Position numbers and translations under genes: made by a program. From contig NC_135761.1 in the NCBI RefSeq assembly GCF_052425735.1, positions 54,932,001 through 54,996,000 on the forward strand: 64,000 nucleotides of DNA. The letters run 5' to 3'. The notes beneath the pieces are model-generated. The model was not told the origin of the DNA and ran no database searches. It saw only the letters and a program-made list of their open reading frames with translations. This DNA is from Oculina patagonica (taxonomy: Eukaryota). Each line of letters starts with the position of its first letter. The stretch's first letter is position 1. Of the stretch, positions 156 to 34,254 are shown piece by piece.

Positions 156-265
156 GCCGTTTGTACGTGGAATTGAGAACTGGACAGCTTCCTCTTCTTC
201 TTTCTTTGATGGCGTACGCGGTTCAGGAAGCTCTAGCTTGGGCACTGTCTGATTCCTCTCCAGAC
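156..265 (-). CDS. Exon following the EGF array (GLERNQTVPKLELPEPRTPSKKEEEAVQFSIPRTNG)
   Basis: tag|GT acceptor at 265, GGC|GTAAG donor at 156, open in the expected phase. Confidence 0.7.
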
Positions 266-15200: not shown

Positions 15201-18200
15201 GTTGTTGTCGAAGACGGAGTTGAGCTTTGGGTCTGTGAGAAGAAATCGCTCCCACTGGACACCTGCAAACTTGCTGACGACGTTGTTGTAAAAGACGGAG
15301 TTGTGCTTTGTGTCTGTGAAAAGAAGTCACTCTCACTGACAACTTGTCCACTTGTTGACGAACTTGCCGAAAAATTTAGAGGTGGGGTATGGGTCTGCGA
15401 GACGCTCACCGATCCATTAGCTGATTGGCTAGACATACCTGGACTGACTGACGCAGTCTCGATGATTGAAGACAGCTGAGACGCTGAAACAGATAAAAAG
15501 ACAGACTTTGTGAGGTTTTGAACAGTAAAAGGGAGACTGCACTCTCGGAGGTACCATACAGGTGGCTTCTGTAATACGTCATTACCTGCACGAGCGAGAT
15601 TCAAAGGATGTAAATTAAGATATTTAAACCAAACCAAACACGAATCAGGATCATATCAAATACAATTTTGAAACTTTAACTGTTTCGTTAAATTTATCCA
15701 TAAACCGGAACTGCAATAAGTTTGTTTGTTTTTATTGTCTATTTTTCTAAGAATGAACTACGTTCCTTAGGTTCATTTACTTACATGACGTGTAAACAGT
15801 TGAAGTTGCTGTGGTACAAAGGCAATAGCACACAGAGGAACTCAGAGCAGCAGACTGGCTGGATGTAGTGTTCACAGAAGTCGTTGAATTGTACGAGAAG
15901 AGAGATGAAGAGCTGGATGTTACGTTTGCAACAGTCGCTGAATCGTACAGGAATGAAGAACTATATGACCCCTTTGAAGAAGAGCCACAAGGACATACAC
16001 ACATGGAAGAGGCATCAACTATACTGGAAGTAGTTGCTAGAAAGACCACAAACCACATAAAATTATTAATGTTTTACACTGTTCTGCAGAAAGATTATAA
16101 AGAATGCATATCAAGCCTACATGTGTGAATTAGGAATGAACCGAAAAGAATCATTTGGAATAGAATCTTGTATCATCAGCTGATAACACATCAATCTACT
16201 AGACAATTTAAATGCCTAAAAATTGTGTAGTATCGCTATACATGTCTATCTGTATATTTGGACGAGTTTTGATGTATTTTCACAGGCTCGCAGGGCAATA
16301 AATACAAAAAATGGACCCGACATTAGATCGTGCTCGCTTGTTTTTTGTTTCGGTTTTCCACTTACTCCAAAAATATGCCCAAGTATAAAATTGTTGCCTA
16401 AATTATTTGTACCTAAGTAAGCGAAGTTGGATAATAAAAGATAATAAGCTCTACTGGAAATGATAAAATTATGGCACATTAACTTACAGATCAAAGAAGC
16501 AGCCGACGCTGTAGTGCTGCAAGGGCAATAACATACATTGGAACTGCTCGAAGTGGAAGATATTAAGGATGAAGAACTTGGTGAGCTCGTTGTATTAGAC
16601 CCACAAGGACAAATACACATGGAGACAGCATCTGCACTGCTTGAAGAAGTTGCTGAAAATAACAGAACTCGACGTTAATGTTCTCTGCCAGTGAATCTAA
16701 ATATGGGAAAGTTTTCATCCCAAGGATACACAAAATTATTTCACACTTATTGGTAAAAAGCATAAGTATTTTGTAAAAAATAATTTATGATATATAACCC
16801 ATTTTTCTGATCGAAAACCATTTCTATAGTAAATGCAATATGCAGAATTTATTTATAGCTTAAGTTTTTGAGCACTAAGACACAGACATATCGACTCTTG
16901 TGCGTGCAATTTTCCGGCTATCTTGCAGTTGGGTTTAAAATAATTTAAGTCACTGGGTTTAATATGAAGACAAAGCGCATGATTCCACTGGCTCACACCT
17001 TGCCTTGTTCCAAGGGCACAATTTAGCCGCGCAGGAAATTCGTTAGGGTCGCGTAGCTTCCTGTCTTGATCGAACCCCGTACAGGGTCTATCCACACTCT
17101 CACTAAAGAAATATCAGAGTATTGAATAATATCTCTGACGTGTTAATAACGGTATTTATATAGCGCATTTCCATGCGCTTAATGCGCTTTACAACCCTTT
17201 GCGGGGACTTATACCAGAATGCCCTATACAAGTACTTTTTTCTTCAATTTAGTTGGATCTGTCAGATTTTCGTTTAAGGCACAATCAAAACAACTGATGA
17301 ATAAGAAATAACTGAAAGCCAAGACCATTTCTATATCATTCAAATACTTTCAAATAGGGGGAGTGTTGTTTGTTATTAATATTGCATATTACTTTGGTTT
17401 CTTTCCAGCTTTTTGAAATGCATTTTCGTTAAAACACACGCAAGTTGAAACATAATTTCGAACCCATCAGAGCGTTAACAATTTGCATTTAAATGATGGG
17501 GCATTTTATTACGTTTAGGCGACTCTGTCAGGGTCAAGTTCAGCTGATAATTTCTGGAGGCCGGGCTTTTCCACTAGGGACGCTTTAATTTCCATATCAT
17601 CACAATAAGAAAGACAAAAGCTGACAGGACTGTCTATGAATTTAAAACTGATGATAAATTGAAGAGCAGTATTAGCGAAGTCCGGTCAGGGTTAAGTACA
17701 AGCAGCAACGATTTATGGGGCTATTGACTGCTATTGGGTTCTTTGGATAATATGTGCTTTTGCTTCGTTTGCATTACAGTAGAGACTAAACTGAACGGTT
17801 GGCCAATTCTGTCTGTAATTTTTGACGGTGATAAACAACGACCAATTGCATACAAAATTAGCCTAGAAATGTTTCTTTAACGACCTATAACCGACATCTG
17901 ACGTTAGACAAATTAATAATAAATCTATCTTCTCTACGATCATACATTTGGCAGATGGTGATTGTACGTTTTTGCTCTCGTAATTGTCCAAAACTAGAAA
18001 AAATCTTGACGGTAAGACTTTTTTCTATCAAGACTGGGTTGATAAGGGTGCCCTTACTTTGCAAGATGTCATTGATAACAACGGCAGATATTTGCCATTT
18101 GAACAGTTTAAACAACGATATGGAATACAGTGCAACTTTCTTCAATACTTCCAAGTAATATCCGAATTGAAATACTCAAAAGCTTTATATAATTAATAAA

Positions 18201-21200
18201 GCAAAATATAAGAAGAGTTGGTAAGGTAAATGATGAGATGAAGCTAGGAAACATCTAATTAAAGCTACATCACTTATATCTCGAATGTTTCTGCAAAAAA
18301 AATTATAATACAATACTGGAATAGTTGCAAAAGTTCTGTGTCGCTCTGCAGTCACTAAATGATATAACAAGAAAGCAAACATTACTGCTGAAGTTATCAC
18401 AGTGAAATGTTTCTTAAATAACACGATACACGAAAACAAGTCAAACACAACCGTATTACGCACAACTGTAGTTTCCATTTTCCCACCCATGAGTTGAAGT
18501 ACGACTGTTTGAGTGTGTCGAGTACAACGATGAAGGTCTTTTTGAGCTAAGACACCTTCGAAACGTTTGCCGTTAAAGTATGAATGTCAAAAGTGCTAAA
18601 GGAAGGCAAATATGACTTACCCTGGACAAAACCAAGAAGTAGAAACACAAAATAAACTGTCCACATACTGTTGTTGAGGGACATCATTCACTTTGACGTA
18701 TTGTTTAATTTCGATTTCTTTAGGACATTATTATATCAGTTGTGCATGGATGGTCATATTCAGTGGGGCGTGATGCCTTTAGACAAAATTATGCGTCTAC
18801 TGTTTTATGCATCTTGGCTTCGTTGGATGAGCACTTAATCAGATAATTTACTTTTTTTCCTGAAACACGAAGGGACATGTCGCAGCGACATTTAGCAGGG
18901 ACAAAATCAAAACATGTTCATACACAAGAAAATGTAGCATGGGCGCGACGTGTTGCAGCGACACGTGCCCTCGTGTGTGGCAATACATTCCCGGAGGGTG
19001 TGCGCTGCAAAATGGCCCTTCTACGCTTTCTCCTGTTTGTTTATGCAATGATTTCGGCAAAGCAACAACATGTCATTGCAACATGTCCTTTCTCGTCTTA
19101 ATTGAGACGAGCGTCACTGAGACGCAGGTGCACCTTAGAAACAACTTGCCAGGTTTCATCCAGGCAGATTAAAGAGTCCCATTTTCCAGACGATGACACA
19201 TTTAAAATTTTCACCAGCAGGTTGACCAAAATCGGCTAATTTGTTGTTAAGCTTCAATAAGTTTCCCTTTTCACCGAAAACAATTATCAATGCAAAATCG
19301 TTGAATTATCGAGTTGTTTGTTAAGACTCATATCCGTACTACGACTTTAGTTCCTGATGCTTTTAAGCTATAAAATACTTTTATTCACTCTGTGATCCTA
19401 GAATTGAGAGATGTACTTTATTGAACTATTAACGATAATAACTAAACAAAGAGAAGAGTTTGCTAGAAACACGGTAGCAACCGACCGCTTTATCATTAAA
19501 ACAGTAATTGTTTTTTTTTTTTAGTTTAGATAGCAATCTCTTCCATAGATGATATTGGCCTAGGTATTGAATAGATTCAGTGGCCTTTCCACTTCACAGC
19601 ATGATATAAAAACCCTTAATTTTTCAGCATGTAGTTTATGTTAAATCTTTGACGTCTACATTCTGCCTGCACTAAGTTCCAAAAAATAAGAATACCTGAC
19701 CACCTATTTAAAGCTGGACTGATTTCTAATTTGTAAGTTTTCCCCTGCTCGTTTTTTAACCTTATAACTTTATCCCACTCTTGCATTTCCTTAACCTTTG
19801 TTTTGGTTTGTTTGCATGGTTACCTTGGTGACAGTTTCAAACATGTAATTAAATGAGTTAGAAAGCTTGACCAAATACACCAACCATCATGAAAAAATCA
19901 ATTAATTCATGCCACATTTCCAGTCAGTCCCTTTCTCTTTTTTTTAAAAAAAAAAATCACTGTAATTTGATTCAAGTAAATACATTGCCTTTAATAAACC
20001 AACATGGAGGCGGCTAATGTTATTACGTTTCGACAAATCTGTCAGAGTCAACTTGAGCTGATAATTCATGGAGGCTGGGCTTTGCCAAAAGAGACGCTTT
20101 GATTTCCATTTCAACAAAATAAGGAGGACAAAGGAAGACAGGTCTATCTATGAATTTAGAACTGATGATAATGGGAAATGGATTATTAGTGAAGTATGGG
20201 TCAGGGTTAAGTACAATGCAAACATACACGATTTATGGGCTGAAGGCCGGGCTTTGCCAAAAGGGCCCCCTTGATTTCCATTTCAATAAAATAAGGAGGA
20301 CAAACGCTGACAGGTCTGTCTATGAATTTAGAACTGATGATAAATGAAGGAAGAGTATAAGTGAAGTATATGTCAGGGTTAAGTACAAGTAGCCATGATT
20401 TATGGGCCATTGGGTTACTTGGGTAATGTGTGCTTTTGCTTCGTTTGCATTACAGTAGTGATTAAACTGAAAGGTTAGCCGACTCTGTCTGTAACCGTTG
20501 ACGGTGATACACAACGATCAATCGCATAAACTATTAGCATAGAAATGTTTTTATAACCGAGGTTTCACATTATTTAAATCAATAATAAATCTAACTTCTT
20601 TCCAATCATACTTGCCTAACCTCATTATACGTTTTGCTCTTGTAATTTTCCAAAACATAGCAAAATAAGAGTCTAGAACTGGAGTTATGTTGGCCAACAA
20701 GACGGTAATTTTTAATGTTTCGTTATGTTTCAATATTTGCAGAACATTCAGTCATATTGTTACTACTTCAGTCGCTGTATTTACTCCGTGACTCTGGAAT
20801 GAAGAATTGAGATCCCAAAAGATATTCAAGTAAATGAACACAGCATGGGTAACAGAGTTTGACAGAAAAGAGGCAGAATTATAGGCATAACACATCATAA
20901 TTACTGGTATATTTTTCATTAGCGATATTGCACCCTTTCCACCTCACAGGACGTGATACAATAACTCTTGATTAATCACCCTGCGGCTGCTGTCAGAAGT
21001 CTGGATCTTGCCGCACCCGAATTACTTCCAAAACTAGGGATGTCTGACCGCACAGTCCACTGCGATATGCTTTCTAAGATTTTTGTGTACGTTTCTACTC
21101 TTTTTTTTCTCTGTTTTTCGTCTAATTGAAAACAATTATCAGTCTAAGGTTAACAAAGATCACTGGTAATCATTGTTAACTGCGGCCGCCATTCTTTGCA

Positions 21201-24200
21201 GCTTTTTCTTTTACACACCTTTCTGTTGTGCTGACAATGCGTATTAGTACATCAGTTTTGCCTTATGAATGGCCCTCTTTATACCAGTGACACATGTTTC
21301 TGCTGTTGATTAAGCTATTAAGTTTAAAATAAAAACAACCAACAGCAAATAGATCGTCTTCACGCATAATCTGATCCATGTGGCTTCCTCTTTAAATATA
21401 TTAATTCTATCCATCTTGCGCTGTTCTTTATACTGAGACGCATACGAGTTCTTCTTGACTGATTATACGTATTACCATAGTCACTACTAACTGTGGTATT
21501 ACAGTAATAGAACGCTTCAACCACAACCAAAAACGATTATCAATTCAAGATTAAAAAGGATCATGCGAAACCTTTAAGAAATATTGAGTTGTTTATTAAG
21601 ATTCACGTCTAAACCAGACAATTTGAGTTGTTATTACTTTGAGACTTTAACTGTATGCAGCCGCCAAAGCCACCAAACATTCTTTGCAGGTTTCGTTCTG
21701 ACACAATATATACACTAGCTATCTGATGTGCTGACAATGTGTCGGAGCAACTAACATTCTTGATAAAAGCGTAAAATACAATAAAAAAGCTTCATATTCG
21801 TTGGATCTTACACCTGAATTGACTGGCTTTGCTTGGAAAGAAGTAGATTTTCCGAGTGGTCTGCGATAACGAAAAACCTCACTCCACAACCTACACCAAG
21901 CTTGCTCATGCCCAGAGCCCAAAACATTTCCACGAAATCCTAAAAAAAGACACTTTTCTGAACATGTCGACATGCACGACTTCTCTTCAAACATTTCCTT
22001 GTTATACAAATATAGGGTTTCTTTTACGGATATTTGTACAATAGAATTGAAATGATATCCACAATATCGATTGGAGGAAGAGACTATTTCCCGGTACGCT
22101 CATGGTTACACTATTTATTTTTCACTTGAACAAAAACACTTGAAGTAATGTAATTAAAACAGCTTTCGCGTAAACAAAATACGTAATATAAAAGCTTTAT
22201 ATAATTAATAAAGCAAAATATAAGAAGAGTTGGTAAGGTAAATGATGATGAGATGAAGTTAGGAAACATCTGTGAAAGCTACGTCACTTATATCTCGAAG
22301 TTTCTGCAAAAAAAATTAATACAATACTGGAATAGTTGCAAAAGTTCTGTGTCGCTGCAGCCACTGAATGATATAACAAGAAAGAAACATTATTGCTGAA
22401 GATATCACATGTGAAATGTTTGTTAAATAACACAACACACGAAAACAAGTCAAACACGCACAACTGTAGTTTTCATTTTTTACATTCATGAGTGAATGAG
22501 TTCGAGCGCGACTGCGTGCATGTGTCGAGTATAACGGTTAAGGTCCTTTTGAGCTAAGAAGCCTTCAAAACGTTTGCCGTTAAAGTATGAATCTCAAAAG
22601 GTGCTAAAGAAAGGCAAATATGACTTACCCTGGACGAAACCAAGAAGTAGAAACACGAAATAAACTGTCCACATACTGTTGTAGAGGGACATCACTTTAA
22701 CGTGTTGTTTAATTTCGATTTCTTTGGGACATTATTAAATCAGTTGGGCATGGATGGTCCTGGATATTCAGTGGGGCGTGATGCCTTTAGACAAAATTAT
22801 GCGTCTACTGTTTTATGCCCCTTGGCTTCTTTGGGGGAGCACTTAATCAGATAATGTGCCTTTTAATCCTGAAACACGAAGGGACATGTCGCAGCGACAT
22901 ATTTCAGGGACAAAATCACAACATGTTCATACACAAGAAAATGTAGCATGCACGTGTTGCAGCGACACGAGCCCTCGTGTGTGCTAATACATTTCAGGGG
23001 GCTTGCGGCTGCAACATGCCCCTGCTACATCTTCTTGTGTGTGTTTATGTAGTAACTTTGTCGCAACAACATGTCGCTGCAACATGTACTTTCGCCAAAT
23101 CCGTCTTTTTCTCATCTTACTTGAGGCGAAAGTCATTGAGACTCATAACGAGGTGCACTAAAAAAAAAACTTCAGGTTTCATCCAGGCGGACAAAGGTTC
23201 CGATTGTCCAAATGATGTCACATTAATTTTCAACAGCAGGTTGACAAAAATCGGCTTAGTTGTTGTTAAGCTTCTATCAGTTTCCCTTTTCACCGAAAAC
23301 TAGTTGGAAATCGTTGAAATATTGAGTTGTTTATTGAAAACTCATATCCTTATCTTTTCTATACGACTTCAGTTGCTGATGCTCTAAAGCTCTAAATACC
23401 AGTATTTACTCCGTGATCCTGGTATGAAGACATACACTTCATTGAAATCGTAAAGATAAAAACTAAACAAATAGAAGAGTTTGCTAGAATAATGGTAGAC
23501 CAACCCGCTTTATAACTAACCGTAATTGTTTTTTTACTTAAGATAGAATCTTTAATTGACGATATTGGCCTACAGTGTGGATATTGAATAGATTCAGTGA
23601 CCTTTCCACTTCACAACCTGATGTAATAACCCTTAATTTATCAACATGCGGTTTTTGTTAAATCTTTGACGTCAGTATTCTGCTGCACCAAGTTCCAAAA
23701 ATAAGAACTCTGCCCATGTTTGTCTGGGGGAATAATAGTTAAAGCGCGACTGATTTTTGAGAATTTTTGCGTACCTTTTTTCCTGCTCTCTTTTTAACCT
23801 TATAGACTATCTTTATTTCACTCTCACATTTCCGTAGCCATGTTTTGATGTGTTTTCATGGTTACCTTGGCAACAGTTTCAAAACATGTAATTAAACGAG
23901 TTAGAAGGCTTGAATTGACGGAGTAACCCAACCGTCATGATAAAGGGCCATTAATTCGTGCCACGTTTCCTGTCAGTCCCGTTCTTTAGAAAAAGATCAC
24001 TGTGACTTGATGGAGTAAATCATTGCCATATTTAATTACCTTCTGCCATATTGTGTGTTTCCAATGTAAACTTATTGTACCTATAACTTTTTGTTCACTT
24101 TTTTCGATTTCCACTTCATTAAAGCCTAATTATGCTTTAAACATATAGGTTATTTAATTTAATGTCTTAGCTCTGTTCTACTCTGCCACTGATTTTGTAA

Positions 24201-27200
24201 TTTCTTTGTAGTGGCAAAATAAATGAACTTGAAAACTTGCAACTTGAAATACTTTTGCATTTTTTGCATTAACAACCGAAAGCAATTATCAGTCCAAATA
24301 GTACTGAAAATATACACAATTTTCTAACCTGCTGACAGTGCATCTGAGCAGCTCAGCTGATTTTTGATGAAAGACAATTCCACAAAAGCCTGACGATTGA
24401 TGGTGCCATAAAACTTTCTGGCTTGGCTTGGAAAGAAGGAGATTTTGCCGAACATGCCGACTTGATCTCGCCTCAGTTTGAATACACAGTATTCCCGGCC
24501 ATGGAAATAAAAATGTTGCTTTCCGAAGCGGGCTTTTAAAAAAGAATGTTTTATGTAGGATTCACACTAAACCAAAAATGACTAAGAAAAATTCGACAGC
24601 TTTTCAGTATAACTACTATATCAAACCGGGTAAGAGTTTATATAGTAAATTATGGGGCGCTGGTGAAAGCTTTCTCTTTAAATCGAAAACGTAGCTGGCA
24701 AAATATCTAATCTATCAATCCCACATCCTTTCTCATATGCACCTAACTAAGAGTTACTAGTTAAGTTCCTTGTGTCGCTTATTGTTACTGAATATTGCAA
24801 CAACAAATTAAATTAAACGTTACTGCTGGAGCTATTACTGGTGGAATGTTGCTAAGTAACACGAAAACAAGTAAAAAAAAGTCAAACACGACGATTAGGA
24901 TCAACTACAACTTTCATTTTTCCATCCATGAATTCAAGCACGACTGCTTGCATGTTTCGAGTGCAACGGTCAAAGTCCTTGGAAAAAATACCTTGATCAT
25001 GTTTGCCGTTTGAGTACGAAGGCGAAAAAATTTATAAAGGAAGACAAATGTTACTTACCCTGGATGAAAACAGGAAGTAGAAACACAAAATAAACTGCCC
25101 GCATAATGCTGTAGAAGGACATTACTTTGGCTTGTTGTTTAATTTCTATTTTTTTGTTCATTATTAAATCAGTGTTGCATGAGTGGTCCTCTTCAGTGAT
25201 GCATAATCTGTTCAGATGAATCATCTGCTGTTGTATTAGTCTTGGCTTTCGGGCGCACTAAGCCCTTTTTTTTTAGTAAAATAACAGAGTCTACTTGGGG
25301 TATACAGAGCTGAGGTATATTTATTTATTACATTTAACATAAATTTCAAAATAGCTGGTAACAAGATTCCATGCTAATTGGCTATGAAATTCTGAGAAAC
25401 CAGGAACACAGTAGTTGAAAGGTCGTTTTCTTCGAAAGATTTAAGAGTGTTTCGAGAGTGTCATTCATGATCAGCTCTCAGACATTCAAGTTCACCAGAA
25501 ATAACTATTTTTTAATCAACTAGCACGTACATCTGAAAGCAATCCTTTTAATTTAACGACTAGGCAAAAAACATAAACAGTTTTCTAACAATTAAGTATA
25601 AGTAAAAAGGGAAACTGATTGAAGGTTATACACGAGCAAGTTAGCGACCCAGCTTTATTTGGGTCTGCAGTTTGATTATTAAAAATGTATGTGACAGGGA
25701 ATGCAGGCGATGAAAAAAACTGAGTTAAGAATATTCTGGATGAACTCAGGGATATGTTTTAAATAATGCACCTGGTTATAAAAATAAAAAGAAGAGAAGA
25801 AGATTATGCATCAAGACGAACTATGTGATTTGGAACGTAGCTTTAAGAGACCACTGCGGAGTATCTTGAGGGCGAGTATTTTAGCAACCGTATTTATTCA
25901 GGCGTCGCGTTTTGGTCAACTGCATGAGAACAGCACAGTCACTTGTACTGACATTCTGTTACGAAAAACAGACGCGTCTATTTTTTAGAACGTGCAGGAT
26001 TAAGTTCACTTGTACACATTTTATGTAGTTATCTACCATACAGAATACCGTCATTGTGGTGCTCTTGGCAGCACCCAGTCTAAGTTAGTGTGCCTTCTCT
26101 TCAGCCTGAAGCCGGTGAAAACCGATTTACAGCCTTCAAGTAAGTAACGAGTAGTTTACAACACGACAAGAACTTAAACTTAAAGTTATAATTGATGCAA
26201 TGATAATGAATAATACAAAAACGGGAAACGATCTCTCTTGAGTGAAACAGAACGCTGTTTGAGTACGAGCGTAAAATATTTTAGAGAAAGACTTACTTAC
26301 ATTACTTATCCTGGAAGAAAACAAGGAGTAGGAAAACAACGCCAACCGCTCGTTTTATGTCGAGTGACATTACTGCGCCGCGTTTTTTAGCTATCTGTGC
26401 AAACTTCTAACATCAACACGTTTTTCCAATTCGCGGAAAAATATCCTCTTTATTTTGGTCCACCTGACGTCATGCTATCGGGCAGAGTTGACACGAGCAA
26501 CAAACTTTACTGAGAACTTGAAAGCTTTATATAATAAACATATCAATCGTATGAACAGTTGATAATGCGTTTGCGGCTTCAAGACCAAACATGCCAACCA
26601 AAGCATCTTATCACAGCTACATCGAAATCTCGAAAGTTTCAGCGCCTCCTGGGATACGAAATCTTGGCTTGTGCAAAAAGCGCTTTCAGGTAACACTATT
26701 TGAGTTTCAAAACAACAGGAAAATGATTTTAGTATTGTGCAACAAATAAAGGACCACTTTAACTGAAAATAACGGCTTATAAAACGGGAGTAAAGAATCT
26801 TGTTCAAAACGGTTTACTACAATTTTTCTTATGAAGTTATCTGCCAAAATCTTGAACCGTATTCCGTAGACAATCATTTTCATTTAAAAAAAACGTCGCT
26901 TCTCTCACGTGCGCCTTTGATTCTGCCATAAGCACAAAGAATCATTTAAATCATCTTTTAAATTTTAGCTTTGCACAATAATTTTGGCTTTAGGTGTCAG
27001 GTTGGCTAAACAAAAATATTCCACGGTTATTTTAGCAACGTTTCAGGCAACATGTTACAAAACAAACTTATTATTAAAAGAAAAGGAATCATTATCGTCG
27101 TTTTAAAAATTTCAAGTCACGCCCATCGTCAAAGTACAAAGTACGCAATAAATCGAATTATTTATAGCTAAGGTAAAACAAACATTACAAAAAGCTATCT

Positions 27201-30200
27201 CATACTTATTCTTTAAGCAATAGACCGCGCTTTCTAGGGCTTTACTGGCGTAATAAAACCACGCGGGATGTTGGGAGAACACGAGAAAAGCTTGTAAATC
27301 TCGAGCCGCAGAGTGATTTACAAGCTTTTCGAGTGTTCTCCCAACATCCAAAGTGGTTTTATTACGCCAGTAAAGCCCTAGAAAGTGCGGTTTATTGCTT
27401 TTATGAAATTACTATAGAAAACTTTCGTCAAAGACATAGGAATCTATTTTATTTTTCGTGATCAAATGTCTTATTCTCAACAAGTTCATCGGATGACGCG
27501 GTAAACCAATCACAGCGGCTGAAAGAATAAAACACAGGTTCAGCTCCGCACACAAAACCCACGGATCGACGAGCAAAAACGTTCAAAAGTTGTCTTAAAG
27601 CTATAAAAGTCTTAAGAAAGGAAAGGAAAAATGCAAACTGACATAGTACGAAATGTATTCAACGATTCTTTGTTCTTTGACGTGGAAAACTAGCAAATTG
27701 TGGCCGGAGTCATTCATCGCGAAAGTGTGAGAGACTGCACGAAAACTTTGCAAGATTACAAACTTCGCAGACTGACGAAGGTATTGAGAATAAAGGTTAG
27801 TTTCACAAACTCTGCTTTAGAAATTTGTTATGATTTTATTTATTCCGTATTCTTTCGTTTTCGCCGAATAACAGACTTGGCAGAAAGCACTGAAAGCATA
27901 TAAAACTAAAATTATAATTCAAGCGCGAGGACTCAGCGTAAGTTTCTGCCATCAAAATAATTCAAGTAAGCTTTCATTGCGACCAATTTGATGCAGTTTT
28001 AATTCCTTTCAAATAACATTTCCGAGTAAATGTTGATTGGAACGATATCCATGTTTTTAATATTTTCCAGTCCGATAAAAGCCGACCTGTTTATAATGTT
28101 TCTTCTCATATGTTTTTCTCCGCGTTTTCGTTTTTTTTCTCTAGTTACTTCGCTCCATATGTGGCGAGTGGGAAAATTTGTTTTTGTGATCCACCCTCAG
28201 TAAATTTTCACATTGAGAACCATATTCTCCGTTTTAACAATCAGATAGACCAAAAGAAGATATTAAACTAACGTTAATTCTTCGTCCTTATGGCTTATGC
28301 GTAATCGAGCGCAGTGCGACCATGTCGGCACGGAAGCGGGAGTTTACCGGTACAATAGTACATAGGTTTTTTGAACAATTTGACCAATCAGAGCGCGCGT
28401 AGTATCTGAGTTATTTTATAAAATCCGATAAAGTTCTGAAAAGCATAGGAGTTCATCTTGTTAGATGTAAACAGGAAATTCCACAGCAAACTGGGGGAGC
28501 TGTATTACAAAGACATTTTAACTAAATTACGTAATTGCAAGAAGAGAAACAAATATTTGCCGGAATTTTTACTGAATCACAAATTATTATCTGTAGATGT
28601 GGTCAATAAAGTATAAAAAATTTGACGTAAGATGCGAAACAAAATTAAAAGTGAGCTGGACTGCGAAGACGATATGGACATGCCCAAAGAATTTAATATA
28701 AACACGAACAATTAAAATTGATCACTTTATCTTTGTACTAAGTTGCATGATTCATAAACAACGGAGAACAACATACCGGGAGATGGAGACACACTGCTGG
28801 ATGAAAACACGCTGAAACTGCTGCTGCTTGAGCTTGAAGGAACACTGAAACTGCTGCTGCTTGAGCTTGAAGGTAAACTGTAACTGCTGCTGCTTGAGCT
28901 TGAAGGAACACTGAAACTGCTGCTGCTGCTTGAGCTTGAAGTCAGACTGAAACTGCTGCTGCTTGAGCTTGAAGGCAAACTGTTACTGCTGCTGCTGCTT
29001 GAGCTTGAAGGTAGACTAAAACTGCTGCTGCTTGAACTTGAAGACACACTGAAACTGCTGCTGCTTGAGCTTGAAGACACACTGTAACTGCTGCTGCTTA
29101 AGCTTGAAGATAGACTGAAACTGCTGCTGCTTGAGCTTGAAGGTAGACTGAAACTGCTGCTGCTTGAGCTTGGAGACAAACTGAAACTGCTGCTGCTTGA
29201 GCTTGAAGGCAAACTGTAACTGCTGCTGCTTGAGCTTGAAGGAACACTGAAACTGTTGCTGCTTGAGCTTGAAGACACACTGAAGCTGCTGCTGCTTGAG
29301 CTTGAAGATACACTGAAACTGCTGCTGCTTGAGCTTGGAGACAAACCGAAACTGCTGCTGCTTGAGCTTGAAGTCAAACTGAAACTGCTACTAATTGAGC
29401 TTGAAGGAAGACTGAAACTGCTGCTGCTTGAGCTTGGAGACAAACTGAAACTGCTGCTGCTTGAGCTTGAAGGTACACTGAAACTGCTGCTGCTTGAGCT
29501 CGAAGGCAAACTGTAACTGCTAATGCTTGAGCTTGAAGGCAAACTATAACTGCTGCTGTTTGAGCTTGAAGACAAACTGTAACTGCTGCTGCCTGAGCTT
29601 GAAGGTGAAATGAAACTGCCGCTGCTTGAGCTTGAAGGAACACTGTAACTGCTAATGCTTGAGCTTGAAGGCAAACTGTAACTGCTAATGCTTGAGCTTG
29701 AAGGCAAACTATAACTGCTGCTGCTTGAGCTTGAAGGCAAACTGGAACTGCTGCTGCTTGAGCTTGAAGGTGAACTGAAACTGCCGCTGCTTGAGCTTGA
29801 AGGAACACTGTAACTGCTAATGCTTGAGCTTGAAGGTAAACTGTAACTGCTGCTGCTTGTACTTGGACACACACATAAACTGCTACTGCTTGAGCTTGAA
29901 GGCAAATTATAACTGCTGCTGCTTGAGCTTGAAGGCAAACTGTAACTGCTGCTGCTTGAGCTTGAAGGTAAACTGTAACTGCTGCTGCTTGAGCTTGAAG
30001 GCAAATTATAACTGCTGCTGCTTGAGCTTGAAGGTAAACTGTAACTGCTGCTGCTTGAGCTTGAAGGTAAACTGAAACTGCTGCTGCTTGAACTTGAAGG
30101 CAAACTGAAACTGCTGCTGCTTGTACTTGGACACACACATAAACCGCTACTGCTTGAGCTTGAAGGTAAACTGTAACTGCTGCTGCTTGAGCTTGAAAGC

Positions 30201-33200
30201 AAACTGTAACTGCTGCTGCTTGAACTTGAAGGCAAACTGTAACTGCTGCTGCTTGAGCTTGAAGGCAAACTGAAACTGCTGCTGCTTGAACTTGGACACA
30301 CACATAAACTGCTACTGCTTGAGCTTGAAGAAAAACTGAAACTGCGGCTGCTTGAACTTGAAGGCAGACTGAAACTGCTACTGCTTGAACTTGGACACAC
30401 ACATAAATTGTTGCTGCTTGAAGTTGGAGAAACACTGAAACTGCTGCTGCTCGAAGTTGGGGACACACTGAAACTGCTACTGCTTGAGCTTGGACACACA
30501 CATAAACTGCTGCTGCTTGAACTTGAAGGCAGACTGAAACTGCTACTGCTTGAACTTGGACACACACATAAACTGCTGCTGCTTGAAGTTGGAGACACAC
30601 TAAAACTGCTGCTGCTTGAACTTGAAGGTAAACTGAAACTGCTACTGCTTGAGCTTAAAGGCAGACTGAAACTGCTACTGCTTGAGCTCGGACAGACACA
30701 TAAACTGCTGCTGCTCGAAGTTGGGGACACACTGAAACTGCCGCTGCTTGAACTTGACGACACACTGTAACTACTACTGCTTGAACTTGGAGACACACTG
30801 AAACTGCTACTGCTTGAACTTGGACACACACATAAGCTGCTGCTGATTGAGCTTGGAGACACACTAAAACTGCTGCTGCTCGAAGTTGGGGACACACTAT
30901 AACTGCTGCTGCTTGAACTTGTAGGCACACTGTAACTGCTACTGCTTGAACTTGGACACAGACATAAACTGCTTCTGCTTGAACTTTGGAACACACTGAA
31001 ACTACTGCTGCTTGAGCTTGAAGACAAACTGAAACTGCTGCTGCTTGAACTTGGTGACAAACTGAAACTGCTACTGCTTGAACTTGGACACACACATAAA
31101 CTGCTACTGGGTGAACTTGCAGACACACTGAAACTGCTGCTGCTTGAGCTTGAAGACCAACTGTAACTGCTACTGCTTGATCTTGAGGAATGACTGAAAC
31201 TGCTACTGCTTGAAGTTGGAGACACACTGGAACTGCTACTGCTTGAGCTTGGAGACCAACTGTAACTGCTACTGCTTGAACTTGAGGAGTGACTGAAACT
31301 GCTACTGCTTAAACTTGTAGACGGACTGAAACTGCTACTGCTTGAAGTTGGAGACACACTGGAACTGCTACTGCTTGAGCTTGGAGACCAACTGTAACTG
31401 CTACTGCTTGAACTTGAGGAGTGACTGAAACTGCTACTGCTTAAACTTGTAGACGGACTGAAACTGCTACTGCTTGAAGTTGGAGACACACTGGAACTGC
31501 TACTGCTTGAGCTTGGAGACCAACTGTAACTGCTACTGCTTGAACTTGAGGAGTGACTGAAACTGCTACTGCTTAAACTTGTAGACGGACTGAAACTGCT
31601 ACTGCTTGAAGTTGGAGACACACTGAAACTGCTACTGCTTGAACTTGGACACAAACATAAACTGCTACTGCTTGTGCTGGAAGACAAACTGAAACTGCTG
31701 CTGCTTGAACTTGGAGATAAACTTAAACTGCTGCTGCTGCTGCTTGAACTTGGACACACACATAAACTGCTGCACTGTAGAGCTGTGGAGCAAAGGTTTC
31801 TCTCCAGTTATACATTGACCGAAAACTTGACTGCTATGCTAGTTGTTTTTCATTTCTGGTATTTCGGGGTACGACTTTAAATTTGAATGGGTTGCTGTAG
31901 TGTTTTAGTTTGTTATTAACAACGCCCAGAGAGCGTTTAAGATTGTCGTGGTCTAAAGCGATAATTTTACACATCCCCTTTACAAGGACTACGCGTACCG
32001 TGACTTGCCCTCCATCTGGTTGTAGTTTATGCAGTCCCATGTAAACTGACCCCAAATGTTTCCACGCACAACTCAGGGTAACTTAGACATTGTTTAAACA
32101 ATCGGCCTCATAAATTCTGTGTCCATGTATTTCGTTTTTAATTCGTATTTTGATTGCAATAAAATCATTTTTGAACATTTTAATCCGATTGATAAACAGC
32201 AACTATTTGGAAGTTCGAGTTAAATATATAAATTCTGGCTGCTTACATTCGTCAAGTGCTCTCGTCAGCTGAGGGGCAATCGAGAAAAGTGACTAAAACA
32301 TTGTCTTTGAAAAGCAGTCAAGTCATAAAAATAATTCTAAATGCTGTCAATGTCGAGTAAATGACAAAAAAAAAACAATAACAAGCCAATGATTCGCCTC
32401 TCCAGTTGATCAACCCAGATAACTAATTAGATAACTAATTTAATCCATCAGACTCGTATTCTTTGTTTCACTACCTTTTGTACTACTAATGTTAAACGAA
32501 CAAATAAAAGGGAAGCACGGAAATGAGAAAAAACAAAATCTTTGTCGCTGACAGACCGAAGGCATCACGCCTGTGATGATCAACGAGCCGACAGTCGCAC
32601 CGAGTGACCCACCGAGCAAATTGGAATCCACAATCGATTGAAAATAACCGCCGAAAAGACGAAAGCACGGGTGAGAAGGGAGCGCGTGGCGCGCGCGGAC
32701 GAACAAACCGACAAACGGGCCCCAAACGCAAAGACGCAAATGTGCAAGAACGAAGTGTGAAAAGCAAAATGGTGAGTGGAGGGCCACGCCCCAGCGCGAC
32801 GAGGGACGGCACCCCGGGGGAGCCAAGATCCAGGGACGGACGGGGGGCCAAATTGGGGGAACCAAGATCACTGCGACACCGCATTCTTAATATAAACACG
32901 CTATGGCCATACGTATTCTTACAACAGTTACGGTGGTTAGCGTGGATAAATAATCAATTTTTCCTTTGTATTTTGGTGACAGTAGGGAAACTCCTTTGCG
33001 AACGTATATTATTCGATTCATTCAAGAAACAAATTGAAATTTGCCTCAAATAAAGTTTGGTTGTTTACATCAGTGCATTGCGAGCATTTGTGAACATTTC
33101 AACGAGTTATATTAGGCTTGACTAATAAACTGACAATCAATTTTGAGTCTGTTTTCTTGATCTTTTTTTAAATACTGAGCAGATTTTAGAATGTTGCGTT

Positions 33201-34254
33201 GTCTATGAACAGGTCCATTTAATTCGGCCTATTGAAGTTGTTTCGACTTATATAACAAGAGCTGCCATTCGTGTGAACCGTTAGTCTTGCCACAATATGC
33301 ATGGTTCAAGTAATTAGCTGGTTATTGTTTTCTTCTTTATTTTTTAATTAATCCATTTTCACTGCGCAATATATAATCCACCCATACCCTTTCTTTTGGT
33401 AGACCTTTGGAAAGTAATGAAATATTCAGTGCAAGGTTGCAATGTGTTAAACATGCTTACAGGATTACTAATTACTTATCGGTCGACATAATACTTATGA
33501 TGTTTATCAAAGAACTGCGTTGTTGTGAATCGCTTCTTTGTGACGTTATGTGCCTTAAGAAAAATACTGTGGTAGCCGGTAGTCTTTATAGCAACAGTCA
33601 GTGTTAATCAGGAATCAACAACCTATTCCAACTTGAAGCGGGTAATGAGCGGTTTTTATTTTCTACGCCATATAAGATTAATTACATTGTTAGCAACAAG
33701 CGGCACGCCAATCATTAGGAGATCAGTTGCACAAATACATGTTCACTGCCATTCGTGAGATTTCGTTAAAGCGATTTCTGTTAAGCATTACTCTAGCAAC
33801 ATACTAAACGAATGTAGAGTTGATATGGTGAGTTATAACCGCCATAACATGAAATGTCTCTTATTCTTATAAGACCAATCATAACCAAAGCGGTAAATAG
33901 AACGTTAGAATAGCTGCTCTTGCATAAATAGATGAAAGCACTACCAAGTCTCAAAGTCACTGCCTAAGCTCATATATAAATCGGTTTTTAACAAATTATG
34001 TAACAATTAAGAAATCAAACATTGATGTCAAACGCGACATACCGCAGTTCGTATTTTTGTTTTAACATCACAAATTGTTAGCAGTGTTTATCTCGAACTT
34101 TCTATTTCGTGAAAAATGCTGTGACACAATGCCATATATATGACCATGGTTGAAAAACAAAAATGCTTAAAGAAGGAAAATATCGCTTACCTTGGAAGAA
34201 ACTAGCGAGTAGAAGCACAAACCAAGCTGTGCCAATATTGTTGTGGAGGGACAT
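156..34254 (-). CDS. MUC4-like / mucin-like protein (signal peptide, Ser-rich mucin region, NIDO, AMOP, VWD, EGF repeats), multi-exon, 3' end outside the window
   Basis: Manually joined GT-AG exons with consistent phases: a 64-nt leader (e.g. 34191-34254 or 18621-18684), [28777-31782], 16488-16652, 15785-16036, 14140-15483, 13162-13191, 13033-13056, 12175-12335, 11355-11729, 10632-10732, 10038-10130, 8460-9040, 7941-8162, 7188-7526, 6506-6760, 5829-6022, 4266-4602, 3528-3659, 2801-2923, 2203-2325, 1872-2000, 954-1082, 156-265. In-window length is 1761 codons without, or 2763 with, the large exon. Motifs: IAPFW and NTFQAVIITDG (NIDO), QECCY..GSL..GPPDGG (AMOP), WGDPH and GLLGTWNDDPDDDF (VWD), DIDEC (Ca-binding EGF). 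Confidence 0.9.
954..3659 (-). CDS. Five phase-1 EGF-domain exons (3528-3659, 2801-2923, 2203-2325, 1872-2000, 954-1082)
   Basis: Each is 123-132 nt with six-Cys EGF spacing; four begin D(I/V)(D/N)EC; canonical splice sites. Confidence 0.9.
1272..1798. mobile_element. Tc1/mariner-type MITE
   Basis: TIR CAGTCGAAGCTCTC...GAGAGCTTCGACTG flanked by TA; internal CGTAAGCGG subrepeats. Confidence 0.85.
3926..4200 (+). mobile_element. tRNA-derived SINE
   Basis: A box TGGCCGAGTGG, B-box-like GGTTCAAGAC, non-tRNA body, AT-rich (TTTTTA)n tail. Confidence 0.75.
4266..4602 (-). CDS. Exon encoding the end of a cadherin-like/beta segment and two EGF-like modules
   Basis: FVATDDKGASA..CACDHGGQC..CACQGGYTGRFCDSDIDAC..CGPCPSGYTGNGAQC; cag|TTC acceptor and G|GTGAG donor. 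Confidence 0.9.
5829..8162 (-). CDS. VWD domain and following exons (7941-8162, 7188-7526, 6506-6760, 5829-6022)
   Basis: WFWGDPHIKTLDNGNYTFNGLGEY; KGLLGTWNDDPDDDF; CGDDHECLFD; NFPPKI. Confidence 0.9.
8460..9040 (-). CDS. End of NIDO plus AMOP domain exon
   Basis: ACPCTMWQAWLDWGRF, QECCYST, YKYCC, YRPSDDCSRYIPP; canonical splice sites. Confidence 0.9.
9141..9355 (+). mobile_element. Solo LTR
   Basis: TGTAG...CTACA ends, 4-bp TSD TATG on both sides, internal TATAA and ATTAAA. Confidence 0.75.
10038..12335 (-). CDS. NIDO-region exons (12175-12335, 11355-11729, 10632-10732, 10038-10130)
   Basis: MYPYG..GFPFF..LY|ICRNGLI..IAPFWATTD..WVLVVTW..|SNTFQAVIITDG..AGWNAGD. Confidence 0.9.
11047..11336. 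repeat. Interspersed repeat; further copies at about 40297-40565 and 46890-47178
   Basis: Shared GTGTTTCATC..GAGTTGAAAAT..GATGAAACACTGTCTC..ATGAGTTTGAGAA. Confidence 0.8.
12613..12844. mobile_element. MITE, PIF/Harbinger-like
   Basis: TIR AGCCTGGTTTTCACTAGCG...CGCTAGTGAAAACCAGGCT. Confidence 0.8.
13033..13191 (-). CDS. Two phase-1 microexons (30 nt at 13162-13191; 24 nt at 13033-13056), Thr/Pro linker
   Basis: ccttag|CT..GCG G|GTAAG and ttttcag|TT..ACG A|GTGAG; both lengths are multiples of 3. Confidence 0.65.
13335..13968. repeat. Pentanucleotide microsatellites (GCCAT)n, (GGGCT)n, (AGGCT)n spanning two N gaps
   Basis: Directly visible. Confidence 0.95.
14140..15483 (-). CDS. Ser/Thr-rich mucin exon with about 11 tandem 28-aa (84-bp) repeats
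   Basis: Unit such as SSASSQVASESNFFSQTQSSTPSSTTTS; tttcag|CG acceptor, A|GTAAG donor; 1344 nt, phase 1-1. Confidence 0.88.
15785..16036 (-). CDS. Ser-rich exon with MCVCPC and VCYCLC Cys clusters
   Basis: ttctag|CA acceptor, T|GTAAG donor; 252 nt, phase 1-1. Confidence 0.85.
16488..16652 (-). CDS. Ser-rich exon with MCICPC and VCYCPC Cys clusters (paralog of 15785-16036)
   Basis: ttttcag|CA acceptor, T|GTAAG donor; 165 nt, phase 1-1. Confidence 0.85.
17995..18172 (+). mobile_element. Non-LTR retrotransposon ORF2 fragment (Tx1/L1-like)
   Basis: FYQDWVDKGALTLQDVIDNNGRYLPFEQFKQRYGIQCNFLQYFQVIS resembles the region C-terminal to the RT domain. Confidence 0.6.
18621..18684 (-). CDS. Signal-peptide first exon, copy 1 (MSLNNSMWTVYFVFLLLGFVQ)
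   Basis: ATG...CAG G|GTAAG, 64 nt, hydrophobic core. Confidence 0.8.
22629..22692 (-). CDS. Signal-peptide first exon, copy 2 (MSLYNSMWTVYFVFLLLGFVQ)
   Basis: ATG...CAG G|GTAAG, 64 nt. Confidence 0.75.
25059..25122 (-). CDS. Signal-peptide first exon, copy 3 (MSFYSIMRAVYFVFLLPVFIQ)
   Basis: ATG...CAG G|GTAAG, 64 nt. Confidence 0.7.
26310..26370 (-). pseudogene. Signal-peptide exon, copy 4 (MSLDIKRAVGVVFLLLVFFQ), donor mutated
   Basis: 61 nt, homologous to the other copies, but ends CAG G|ATAAGT (GT to AT); read-through hits TAA two codons later. Confidence 0.6.
27210..28422. mobile_element. Interspersed element with a terminal hairpin of about 185 bp (27217-27400)
   Basis: GCAATAGACCGCGCTTTCTAGGGCTTTACTGGCG inverted to CGCCAGTAAAGCCCTAGAAAGTGCGGTTTATTGC; right boundary approximate. 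Confidence 0.55.
28777..31782 (-). CDS. Large 1002-codon poly-Ser exon built from 33-bp (11-aa) repeats with 12 LC(V/L)CP motifs
   Basis: Uninterrupted ORF; ccacag|CT CTA CAG TGC acceptor, CCC G|GTATGT donor; 3006 nt, phase 1-1. Confidence 0.85.
34191..34254 (-). CDS. Signal-peptide first exon, copy 5 (MSLHNNIGTAWFVLLLASFFQ)
   Basis: ATG...CAA G|GTAAG, 64 nt; nearest leader upstream of the large exon. Confidence 0.8.

What the first reader, a model, noticed from the sequence alone, without database searches (positions are those of the whole stretch)
28777..31782. Almost uncharged 11-residue poly-serine repeat punctuated by LC(V/L)CP
Seen: about 90 units of a 33-bp repeat encoding S6-7-(F/Y)-S-(L/V)-(S/P), no Asp or Glu, and very little Thr, unlike a typical PTS mucin. 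Twelve units read LCVCP or LCLCP, often every fourth unit, and all lie in the N-terminal two thirds. A 132-bp higher-order repeat occurs three times at about 31200-31620. Indels within the array keep the frame. Inference: regularly spaced CxC motifs could cross-link chains or bind metal. The Ser tracts could be O-glycosylated or phosphorylated (relevant to mineralisation or adhesion), or form silk-like or low-complexity assemblies.
Basis: partly seen in the sequence, partly recalled or inferred. Interest (0 to 1): 0.7.

Follow-up and report, generated by a model that had tools for sequence, protein, structure and literature searches.

The report
Poly-serine repeat exon of coral mucin
The 3-kb repeat is most likely the giant serine-rich "mucin domain" exon at the front of a membrane-anchored MUC4-like mucin gene of the stony coral Oculina patagonica. 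That makes it an unusual, almost threonine-free variant of an ordinary kind of protein domain, although its transcription could not be shown here.

Summary
There are 89 units of 33 bp on the minus strand, 68% Ser, no D/E/K, 12 LC[VL]CP motifs, and three identical 132-bp higher-order copies.

The array fills a 3006-bp exon (28777-31782) with AG/GT boundaries in phase 1-1. A 64-nt signal-peptide exon (ATG at 34254) lies upstream. Downstream on the same strand lie two CxCPC exons, a classical PTS repeat exon, NIDO, an AMOP-like region, VWD, C8-3_MUC4 and EGF exons, and a transmembrane helix. This is a MUC4-like "mucin-like protein" gene.

A paralogue 220 kb away carries a 1650-codon array at the same position. 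In both arrays the Ser frame has no stops, while the other two sense frames have 8/46 and 27/76. Synonymous variants are enriched in both.

LCVCP is a degenerate copy of a CxCPC motif that brackets Ser-rich linkers in this family, including in Stylophora. Its regular spacing reflects higher-order duplication.

Three further signal-peptide exons lie between the array and the rest of the gene, so inclusion of the array probably depends on promoter choice.

Transcription was not shown. The available runs behaved like low-coverage DNA. Glycosylation, cross-linking and metal binding remain inferences.

The scan holds one other note (s1-317046) on this same stretch, not on other DNA.

The parts
34191..34254 (-). 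Distal first exon 1a. It has an ATG, 21 codons plus 1 base, a hydrophobic core (signal-peptide-like) and a gtaagc donor in phase 1.
   Evidence: It is homologous to the first exon of the paralogue.
28777..31782 (-). Array exon of 3006 bp, phase 1-1. It holds 89 units of 33 bp encoding S6-8-(F/Y/L)-(S/C)-(V/L)-(S/P/C)-(P/S).
29864..31765 (-). Zone holding the twelve LC[VL]CP motifs. Each motif spans a unit boundary and differs from the standard F-S-V-S-P unit by 3 linked substitutions.
31223..31618 (-). Three base-identical copies of a 132-bp (4-unit) higher-order repeat, followed by a diverged half copy.
25059..25122 (-). Alternative first exon 1b (64 nt, intact ATG, gtaagt donor, phase 1). 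It lies downstream of the array.
22629..22692 (-). Alternative first exon 1c.
18621..18684 (-). Alternative first exon 1d.
16488..16652 (-). Exon 3 (165 nt, phase 1-1). It holds an MCICPCG motif, a Ser-rich linker and a VCYCPC motif.
15785..16036 (-). Exon 4 (252 nt, phase 1-1). It holds an MCVCPCG motif, a Ser-rich linker with SSSSS-L-F-S-Y elements and a VCYCLC motif.
14140..15483 (-). Classical PTS mucin exon (1344 nt, phase 1-1) with 12 copies of an 81-bp / 27-residue repeat.
10037..12345 (-). Pre-NIDO and NIDO exons.
   Evidence: Pfam NIDO E = 1.3e-11. Colinear tblastn to coral mucin-like proteins.
8461..9042 (-). AMOP-like exon.
   Evidence: Pfam AMOP scores 19.3 bits, E = 1.3e-3, below the 25-bit cut-off. 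It is 54-82% identical to coral mucin-like proteins.
6486..8160 (-). VWD exons (7927-8160 and 7159-7527) and a C8-3_MUC4 exon (6486-6758).
159..4605 (-). EGF-type exons. The gene continues beyond the window start to a transmembrane helix (L021:8363-8437) and a cytoplasmic tail.

Best explanation
The array is exon 2 of a MUC4-like, type I membrane 'mucin-like protein' gene of Oculina patagonica. It is a VNTR-type mucin domain that arose by runaway amplification of the Ser-rich, aromatic-punctuated linker lying between CxCPC motifs in this gene family.

When transcription starts at the distal first exon (ATG at 34254), the signal peptide is spliced in frame to 1002 codons of almost pure Ser with F/Y-S-L/V-P punctuation. 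The reading frame then continues through two CxCPC modules, a PTS repeat exon, NIDO, an AMOP-like region, VWD, C8-3, EGFs and a transmembrane helix.

Inferred, not shown: the domain is an extended, densely O-glycosylated, uncharged stalk or brush on the cell surface or in shed mucus or matrix. The 12 LC[VL]CP copies, which are degenerate CxCPC motifs, give 24 cysteines free for disulfide cross-links. Starting transcription at one of the three proximal first exons yields the same protein without this domain.
For: Exon anatomy:
- The AG acceptor at 31783 and the GTATGT donor at 28776 bound exactly 3006 bp.
- The only acceptor compatible with the phase-1 donor of exon 1a puts the reading in the Ser frame.
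- All N-terminal exons are phase 1-1.

Gene context on the same strand:
- NIDO at E = 1.3e-11.
- VWD and C8-3_MUC4 (3.7e-16).
- Exons colinear with A. palmata XP_074618591 and O. patagonica XP_078368612.
- A transmembrane helix in the flank.

Paralogue at C4:55,180,199-55,185,229:
- It has the same signal-peptide exon and a 1650-codon array exon at 77% DNA identity.
- It has a homologous donor context, and its NIDO exons begin 850 bp downstream.
- It has no other mucin domain.

Frame-specific constraint:
- Stops in the three sense frames are 0/8/46 (window) and 0/27/76 (paralogue).
- These occur in 0/6/17 and 0/23/53 distinct sequence contexts.
- The share of single-base changes that would create a stop is similar across frames: 4.8/4.2/6.4% and 2.6/4.9/6.7%.
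- Synonymous variants are over-represented: 12 of 19 possible versus 28 of 80 (p = 0.036), and 17 of 19 versus 51 of 80 (p = 0.031).
- In the window array codon position 2 varies least; in the paralogue position 1 does.

Distribution: the unit is not a dispersed satellite. The own-genome search finds it at five places, the two arrays on C4 and three on C13; four of them adjoin mucin-like genes, and the largest C13 array is unassigned.

Annotation of a relative: a homologous C13 array exon is part of GenBank model KAL9952157.

Motif conservation: CxCPC motifs bracket Ser/aromatic-rich linkers four times in Stylophora XP_022805810.

Composition: S+T is 69.7% and P is 7.2%, which meets the mucin-domain definition quoted in PMC9080433.
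Against: - No RNA evidence. The four runs laid showed no 34191|31782 splice joint. Their depth pattern (unique DNA about 2-3, transposon hundreds) looks like low-coverage or reduced-representation DNA. The one certain RNA run gave only a 34-nt match with 2 mismatches.
- No protein containing this array, and no model of this gene, was found in the protein databases. A local control showed that HMMER would detect such a protein. Length limits of the tool leave models above about 3465 residues, fragments below 881 residues (outside the array search) and models with too few shared words untested.
- The array lies 12 kb upstream of the next exon, with three intact alternative first exons in between. 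It could therefore be bypassed always.
- Long open frames can occur in such repeats without coding. A C13 array is open on both strands.
- 3-bp indels are what AGC slippage produces anyway.
Confidence: 0.7

Rival explanations
1. Relic or silent exon. The array and exon 1a are the leftover 5' end of an older gene arrangement. Present-day transcription starts only at the proximal first exons (25122, 22692, 18684), and the array now drifts as an intronic or upstream minisatellite that has not yet acquired stops.
For: - Three intact first exons lie between the array and exon 3.
- No splice joint or RNA support was found.
- No database protein carries the array.
- The three base-identical 132-bp copies show recent unequal crossing-over that can erase mutations.
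Against: - There are zero stops in 1001 codons, against 8 and 46 in the other sense frames at similar stop-proneness. The independently evolving paralogue repeats this pattern with 0/27/76.
- Synonymous variants are in excess.
- The ATG, the donor and the acceptor in the matching phase are all intact.
- In the paralogue the array is the only mucin domain and has no bypassing first exon.
Confidence: 0.15
2. Stand-alone gene. Exon 1a plus the array encode a separate secreted poly-Ser protein that ends by read-through of the donor (stop 16 codons after 28777) and is not joined to the MUC4-like body.
For: - The frame stays open for 16 codons past the donor and then stops.
- There is a 12-kb gap to the next exon.
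- The read-through tail is similar in the paralogue.
Against: - The GTATGT donor is conserved in both paralogues, and the post-donor similarity (about 80%) is no higher than the general paralogue divergence.
- In the paralogue the next coding exon follows about 100 bp later in the matching phase and completes the CxCPC bracket.
- No protein of 550-1752 residues resembling the array exists in the database.
Confidence: 0.05
3. Coding, but working as a phosphoserine or mineral-binding (skeletal matrix) or metal-binding domain rather than as a glycosylated mucin stalk.
For: - Relatives of this gene family are found in coral skeletal organic matrix (A. millepora mucin-like SOMP B3EWY9, PMC3748352; A. 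digitifera mucin4-like, PMC4890752).
- Ser runs can be phosphorylated.
- CxC and CxCPC motifs resemble metal-binding cysteine clusters (my own knowledge, not tested).
Against: - There are no Asp or Glu at all, so there is no acidic priming site of the S-x-E type and no acidic character, unlike known coral acidic matrix proteins.
- The composition fits the mucin definition.
- Cysteines are absent from the last third of this array and from the repeat body of the paralogue's array, whose only cysteines are the three of the lead-in CxCPC motif and one beyond the donor.
Confidence: 0.1

Closest known systems
Human MUC4 and its large tandem-repeat exon (architecture as summarised in PMC9080433 and PMC4890752; the exon layout is from my own knowledge)
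   Same: A signal-peptide exon is followed by one giant exon of in-frame S/T/P-rich tandem repeats, N-terminal to NIDO, AMOP, VWD, EGF, a transmembrane helix and a short tail. Pfam C8-3_MUC4 is hit at 3.7e-16.
   Different: - The unit is 11 residues.
- It has 68% Ser but only 1.8% Thr, and no charged residues apart from 3 Arg (plus 4 His).
- It has an F/Y-S-L/V-P hydrophobic punctuation and 12 CxC motifs.
- A second, classical PTS exon is also present.
- Inclusion of the array probably depends on which of four first exons is used.
Coral 'mucin-like' / 'mucin4-like' skeletal organic matrix proteins (A. millepora B3EWY9, PMC3748352; A. digitifera aug_v2a.09809, PMC4890752)
   Same: They share the NIDO-AMOP-VWD-EGF body. 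The window's exons are 50-85% identical to Acropora and Oculina mucin-like proteins.
   Different: The Acropora matrix proteins are described with TSP1 repeats or truncated N-termini. No poly-Ser VNTR or CxCPC modules were reported. It is unknown whether this Oculina paralogue reaches the skeleton.
O. patagonica chromosome-13 mucin-like proteins XP_078352119 / KAL9952157 and Stylophora pistillata XP_022805810
   Same: Their N-terminal regions are built from Ser-rich linkers bracketed or punctuated by CxC(P)(C) motifs (LVCVCSSP; M/V/L-C-x-C-P-C). The DNA of the C13 arrays is 67-69% identical to this array.
   Different: The C13 units are 10 residues (SSSSSASVSD) and acidic. The Stylophora linkers are short and not tandemly amplified. 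Neither has a 1000-residue uncharged array.
Bacterial serine-rich repeat (SRR) glycoproteins such as GspB (PMC5578698)
   Same: They are long Ser-dominated repeats that serve as scaffolds for dense O-glycosylation on a surface protein. This is a resemblance in how it may work only.
   Different: They are an unrelated lineage with a different export route and repeat sequence. No homology is claimed.

Membership tests
Mucin (PTS/VNTR) domain | In-frame tandem repeats of a short unit within one large exon | tested here: met
   There are 89 units of 33 bp. The only indels are two 3-bp insertions. The exon is 3006 bp.
Mucin (PTS/VNTR) domain | More than 40% Ser+Thr and about 5% Pro (definition quoted in PMC9080433) | tested here: met
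   S+T is 69.7% and P is 7.2%, but Thr alone is only 1.8%.
Mucin (PTS/VNTR) domain | Dense O-glycosylation of the repeats | not testable with these tools
   No glycoproteomic data or predictor was available.
Mucin (PTS/VNTR) domain | Part of a secreted or membrane protein, behind a signal peptide | tested here: inconclusive
   Exon 1a encodes a 21-residue N-terminus with a hydrophobic core and joins in phase. No signal-peptide predictor was run and no RNA junction was seen.
MUC4-like / coral mucin-like protein | NIDO domain | tested here: met
   Pfam PF06119 at E = 1.3e-11 on 11310-11651.
MUC4-like / coral mucin-like protein | AMOP domain | tested here: inconclusive
   PF03782 scores 19.3 bits against a 25-bit cut-off, but covers positions 3-132 of the 143-position profile. 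The exon is strongly homologous to the same region of coral mucin-like proteins.
MUC4-like / coral mucin-like protein | VWD plus the MUC4-type C8-3 domain | tested here: met
   VWD at 6.6e-7 and 1.7e-7 on two exons; C8-3_MUC4 at 3.7e-16.
MUC4-like / coral mucin-like protein | EGF modules, a single transmembrane helix and a cytoplasmic tail | tested here: met
   EGF exons are colinear with P0004 and P0123. A hydrophobic 25-residue stretch after WKW is encoded in L021.
MUC4-like / coral mucin-like protein | The array exon is actually spliced into this gene's mRNA | tested here: inconclusive
   The phases fit, and the paralogue has the same layout with only 850 bp from the array to its first NIDO-region exon. 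However, no RNA joint was seen and no database model was found.
Neutral minisatellite | No reading frame is protected: stops and frameshifts accumulate alike in all frames | tested here: not met
   Stops are 0 versus 8 and 46 (window) and 0 versus 27 and 76 (paralogue), at similar stop-proneness. Synonymous variants are in excess at p of about 0.03 in each array.
Acidic phosphoprotein of mineralised matrices (phosphophoryn-like, coral SAARP/acidic SOMP) | A high Asp/Glu content interleaved with Ser | tested here: not met
   D = 0 and E = 0 in 1001 residues.

The most novel reading that the evidence does not exclude
CxCPC-bracketed Ser-rich modules are an undescribed building block of robust-clade coral MUC4-like mucins. 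In this gene the amplified, CxC-punctuated poly-Ser array would let a membrane-tethered mucin form covalent (disulfide or metal-bridged) networks. Choice among four signal-peptide first exons would switch that cross-linkable 1002-residue domain on or off, for example between mucus, adhesion and calcifying epithelia.
Probability: 0.12. Interest if true: 0.6.

Novelty: new variant of a known kind. Interest (0 to 1): 0.35.

Why it matters
If expressed, this is one of the most extreme Ser-only mucin domains known. It has almost no Thr, no acidic residues and only three Arg.

With so few Arg and no Lys it would be invisible to the tryptic proteomics used for coral mucus and skeletal matrix. Assemblers and gene predictors also tend to drop such arrays. 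Part of the coral surface or matrix glycoprotein repertoire may therefore be systematically missed.

It also shows how a mucin VNTR can arise from a short linker inside a conserved cysteine-bracketed module, and how duplicated first exons could make such a domain optional.

It does not change what is known about mucins in principle.

Tried and rejected
- Protein search with the array: none of 8000 scored candidates of 550-1752 residues reached E <= 0.001. A local control showed that phmmer finds the array itself (1126 bits) and the paralogue (519 bits), so the blank is not a bias-filter artefact. The tool's length window and its word-based candidate pick still limit what the blank means.

- Two searches from the conserved body found many coral mucin-like proteins and identified the genome as O. 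patagonica. They found no model of this gene or of the 55.18-Mb paralogue. An array-bearing model of this gene (about 2950 residues by my count) would have fitted one search's length range, so the blank counts mildly against one being annotated; models above about 3465 residues, or with too few shared words, could not be seen.

In hindsight the array itself would have been the better query.

- Sequencing runs: I did not lay reads on the array itself, because the tool states that it turns away long repeats. I laid 31640-37000 instead, covering the acceptor, intron 1, exon 1a and the upstream region. There was no exon 1a-to-array joint. Depth was about 2-3 on unique DNA and hundreds to two thousand on a transposon at 35.4-36.8 kb. 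I read this as DNA libraries, so the test says nothing about expression. One contig in X2 joins 31758 to 34241 on opposite strands; I could not interpret it.

- A hypergeometric test of stop-making single variants on the consensus unit was uninformative. Variant space is nearly saturated and multi-step codons confound it. I replaced it with the between-frame comparison.

- Rejected readings: dispersed satellite (found at only five own-genome places, four of them beside mucin-like genes); antisense coding (30-162 stops in the plus-strand frames); acidic phosphoprotein (no D/E).


Full report
**1.

Tandem Repeats Finder reports one array at 28808-31738 with period 33, 88.6 copies, 83% matches and no indels. 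The sense strand is the minus strand.

Cutting the 1001 codons into units gives 87 units of 33 bp and two of 36 bp, each of the latter with one extra AGC. There is also a 30-bp last unit and a 10-codon lead-in, LQCSSLCVCP.

The composition is 680 Ser, 72 Pro, 60 Leu, 49 Phe, 37 Val, 26 Tyr, 25 Cys and 18 Thr. There is no Asp, Glu or Lys, with 3 Arg and 4 His.

Twelve LC[VL]CP motifs lie at residues 7 to 636. Five in a row are exactly 44 residues apart. Three base-identical copies of a 132-bp, four-unit block lie at 31618-31223.

**2. Exon anatomy**

On the minus strand the array is bounded by ...ccacag|CT at 31783/31782 and by CCCG|gtatgt at 28777/28776. That gives 3006 bp, or 1002 codons.

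About 2.4 kb upstream lies an ATG at 34254, followed by 21 codons with a hydrophobic core and AAG|gtaagc after 64 nt, which is phase 1. Joining this donor to the 31782 acceptor puts translation into the Ser frame. A second AG eight bases further on would put it into a frame with 46 stops.

Downstream on the same strand are four features:
- Exon 3 (16652-16488, 165 nt).
- Exon 4 (16036-15785, 252 nt).
- A classical PTS exon (15483-14140, 1344 nt) with twelve 27-residue repeats.
- All of these have good splice sites and all are phase 1-1.

Any combination of these exons therefore keeps the frame.

**3. What gene this is**

Further downstream on the same strand the exons hit Pfam NIDO (1.3e-11), VWD on two exons and the MUC4-type C8-3 domain (3.7e-16). 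AMOP is hit only weakly, at 19.3 bits, below the cut-off.

The exons are colinear with residues 474-1763 of Acropora palmata XP_074618591, whose cluster also holds A. cervicornis 'Mucin-like protein' KAK2568181. They are also colinear with residues 267-1536 of Oculina patagonica 'mucin-like protein' XP_078368612.

The gene runs off the window start. In the fetched flank it continues to a 25-residue hydrophobic helix after WKW and to a tail.

The genome is O. patagonica:
- The contig lengths 64,437,903 and 38,349,888 equal those recorded for NCBI O. patagonica proteins.
- XP_078368612 maps at 99% identity to C4:43.98 Mb of this genome.

This family is known. 'Mucin-like' or 'mucin4-like' proteins with NIDO, AMOP, VWD and EGF occur in Acropora skeletal matrix (PMC3748352, PMC4890752) and in sea anemones (PMC9080433).

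**4. Paralogues**

The 33-bp unit is not a dispersed satellite. The own-genome search finds it at five places, the two arrays on C4 and three on C13; four adjoin mucin-like genes, and the largest C13 array (section 9) is unassigned.

The closest lies at C4:55,180,199-55,185,229, which is 220 kb away and in inverted orientation. Its features are:
- It is 77% identical over 3.1 kb.
- It is open for 1677 codons.
- It starts behind an AG with the module SSSADDASMCICPCGS.
- It ends at a homologous GTATGT donor.
- It is preceded by a homologous 64-nt signal-peptide exon.
- About 100 bp downstream an exon carries SVCYCPCSTT. The NIDO-region exons start 850 bp downstream of the array.

That paralogue has no PTS exon, so the array is its only mucin domain.

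The chromosome-13 arrays (unit SSSSSASVSD, 67-69% DNA identity) also precede mucin-like genes. One of them (L019:5496-5822) is included in GenBank model KAL9952157.

**5. Is it coding?**

Direct evidence is lacking (see section 7). The indirect evidence is consistent.

Stops in the three sense frames:
- In the window array they number 0, 8 and 46. In the paralogue they number 0, 27 and 76.
- They sit in 0/6/17 and 0/23/53 distinct sequence contexts, so they are many independent events.
- The share of possible single-base changes that would create a stop is similar across frames: 4.8/4.2/6.4% and 2.6/4.9/6.7%.
- Scaling from the other frames gives an expectation of roughly 10 and 17 distinct stops in the Ser frame. 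This scaling is my own arithmetic from those calls and is rough.

Variants among units:
- Synonymous single-step variants are over-represented: 12 of 19 possible versus 28 of 80 (p = 0.036), and 17 of 19 versus 51 of 80 (p = 0.031).
- In the window array codon position 2 varies least; in the paralogue position 1 does.
- The last position of the unit is Leu or Val through nine different codons.

Caveats:
- Units are copies of each other, so counts are not independent events.
- 3-bp indels are expected from AGC slippage.
- A chromosome-13 array is open on both strands, so length of ORF alone proves nothing.

**6. Origin and meaning of LCVCP**

In exons 3 and 4, in the paralogue, and four times in Stylophora pistillata XP_022805810, a motif (M/L/V)-C-x-C-P-C opens a Ser- and aromatic-rich linker. 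A motif V-C-Y-C-(P/L)-C closes it.

The linkers contain elements such as SSSSS-L-F-S-Y, which resemble the array unit. In the paralogue the array sits exactly between the opening and closing motifs.

I therefore read the arrays as hyper-amplified linkers of this module. The window's LC[VL]CP would be copies of the opening motif that have lost the third Cys. At the exon start, AGT replaces TGT.

Each LCVCP differs from the standard F-S-V-S-P by three linked substitutions and spans a unit boundary. Its 44-residue spacing equals the four-unit higher-order period. The regularity is thus a by-product of unequal crossing-over, not in itself a sign of function.

Conservation of the parent motif between Oculina and Stylophora suggests that the cysteines matter, but what they do was not tested. 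The chromosome-13 proteins carry LVCVCSSP in the same context.

**7. Expression: not shown**

The run search returned eight runs, only one of them certainly RNA.

The reads tool states that it turns away long repeats, so I laid the acceptor, intron 1, exon 1a and the upstream region (31640-37000), not the array. No contig joined 34191 to 31782. Unique DNA had depth about 2-3, a transposon at 35.4-36.8 kb had hundreds to two thousand, and intronic DNA was present. This is the pattern of low-coverage or reduced-representation DNA. The RNA run gave only a 34-nt match with two mismatches.

No database protein contains the array or models this gene. A local control shows that HMMER would see such a protein. 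A full model of the paralogue (above about 3465 residues) falls outside the tools' length limits. An array-bearing model of this gene (about 2950 residues by my count) would have been within the range, so that blank counts mildly against one being annotated.

**8. Alternative first exons**

Three further copies of the 64-nt signal-peptide exon lie between the array and exon 3, with ATG at 25122, 22692 and 18684. All have intact ATGs and gtaagt donors in phase 1.

Only transcripts from the distal exon (34254) can include the array. This agrees with another first-stage note on this window (s1-316977). I verified the sequences but not promoter activity. It also leaves room for the main rival reading, that the array is no longer used.

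**9. Verdict**

The most likely reading (about 0.7) is a real coding exon. It would be the Ser-dominated VNTR mucin domain of a MUC4-like membrane mucin, optional through promoter choice.

O-glycosylation and disulfide cross-linking are inferences from composition and family. The lack of any acidic residue argues against a phosphophoryn-like or acidic-matrix role.

It is a new variant of a known kind, and the interest is moderate to low. The practically useful point is that a domain with only 3 Arg and no Lys would be missed by tryptic proteomics.

Noticed in passing
window 34191-34254, 25059-25122, 22629-22692, 18621-18684 (minus strand): There are four homologous 64-nt signal-peptide first exons, each with an intact ATG and a phase-1 gtaag donor. 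Three of them lie downstream of the array, so they would give array-less proteins.
   Followed up: partly
G000:C4:55180199-55185229 (L014:199-5229, + strand): A paralogous MUC4-like gene carries a 1650-codon Ser-rich array exon of about 145 units. Apart from the opening CxCPC module it has no internal Cys, and it has more Thr/Ala and charged residues. The array sits between an MCICPCG motif and a VCYCPC motif.
   Followed up: yes
G000:C13:1939395-1946024 (L016/L017, minus strand): A 2210-codon open frame is built of 30-bp SSSSSASVSD units (64% Ser, 6% Asp) with one SVCVCD motif. The opposite strand is also open for 2006 codons. The gene it belongs to was not identified. Smaller related arrays lie at C13:1.980 and 2.036 Mb, upstream of mucin-like genes.
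   Followed up: partly
G000:C4 at 43.98, 54.85, 54.895, 54.94 (this window) and 55.19 Mb: At least five MUC4-like paralogues lie on one chromosome, four of them within 340 kb. In the protein searches only the 43.98-Mb copy appeared with a RefSeq protein (XP_078368612).
   Followed up: partly
window 35348-36919: An element of about 1.6 kb is flanked by inverted GGCGGAT-type repeats (35348-35417 and 36851-36919). It has very high depth in all three non-RNA runs, and contigs skip it (joints 35296 to 36948). It is probably a high-copy DNA transposon or MITE that is polymorphic or absent at this site in other individuals.
   Followed up: no
window 14388-15361 (minus strand): Twelve copies of an 81-bp repeat encode a classical Thr/Ser/Pro mucin repeat of 27 residues with Glu/Asp and Phe-Phe. 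It lies in the same gene, downstream of the poly-Ser array.
   Followed up: partly
window 31758 / 34241: One contig of run X2 joins these two places on opposite strands (depth 4.8). One side lies in the first array units and the other in exon 1a. It may be an assembly chimera or a structural difference in the other organism.
   Followed up: no
window 31728: Run X2 shows a 3-bp deletion variant inside the first array units, an in-frame length variant in another individual or species.
   Followed up: no
window 13382-13523, 13562-13815: Runs of N lie in the intron between the PTS exon and the pre-NIDO exon, next to (CTGGG)n and (GGCTA)n microsatellites.
   Followed up: no
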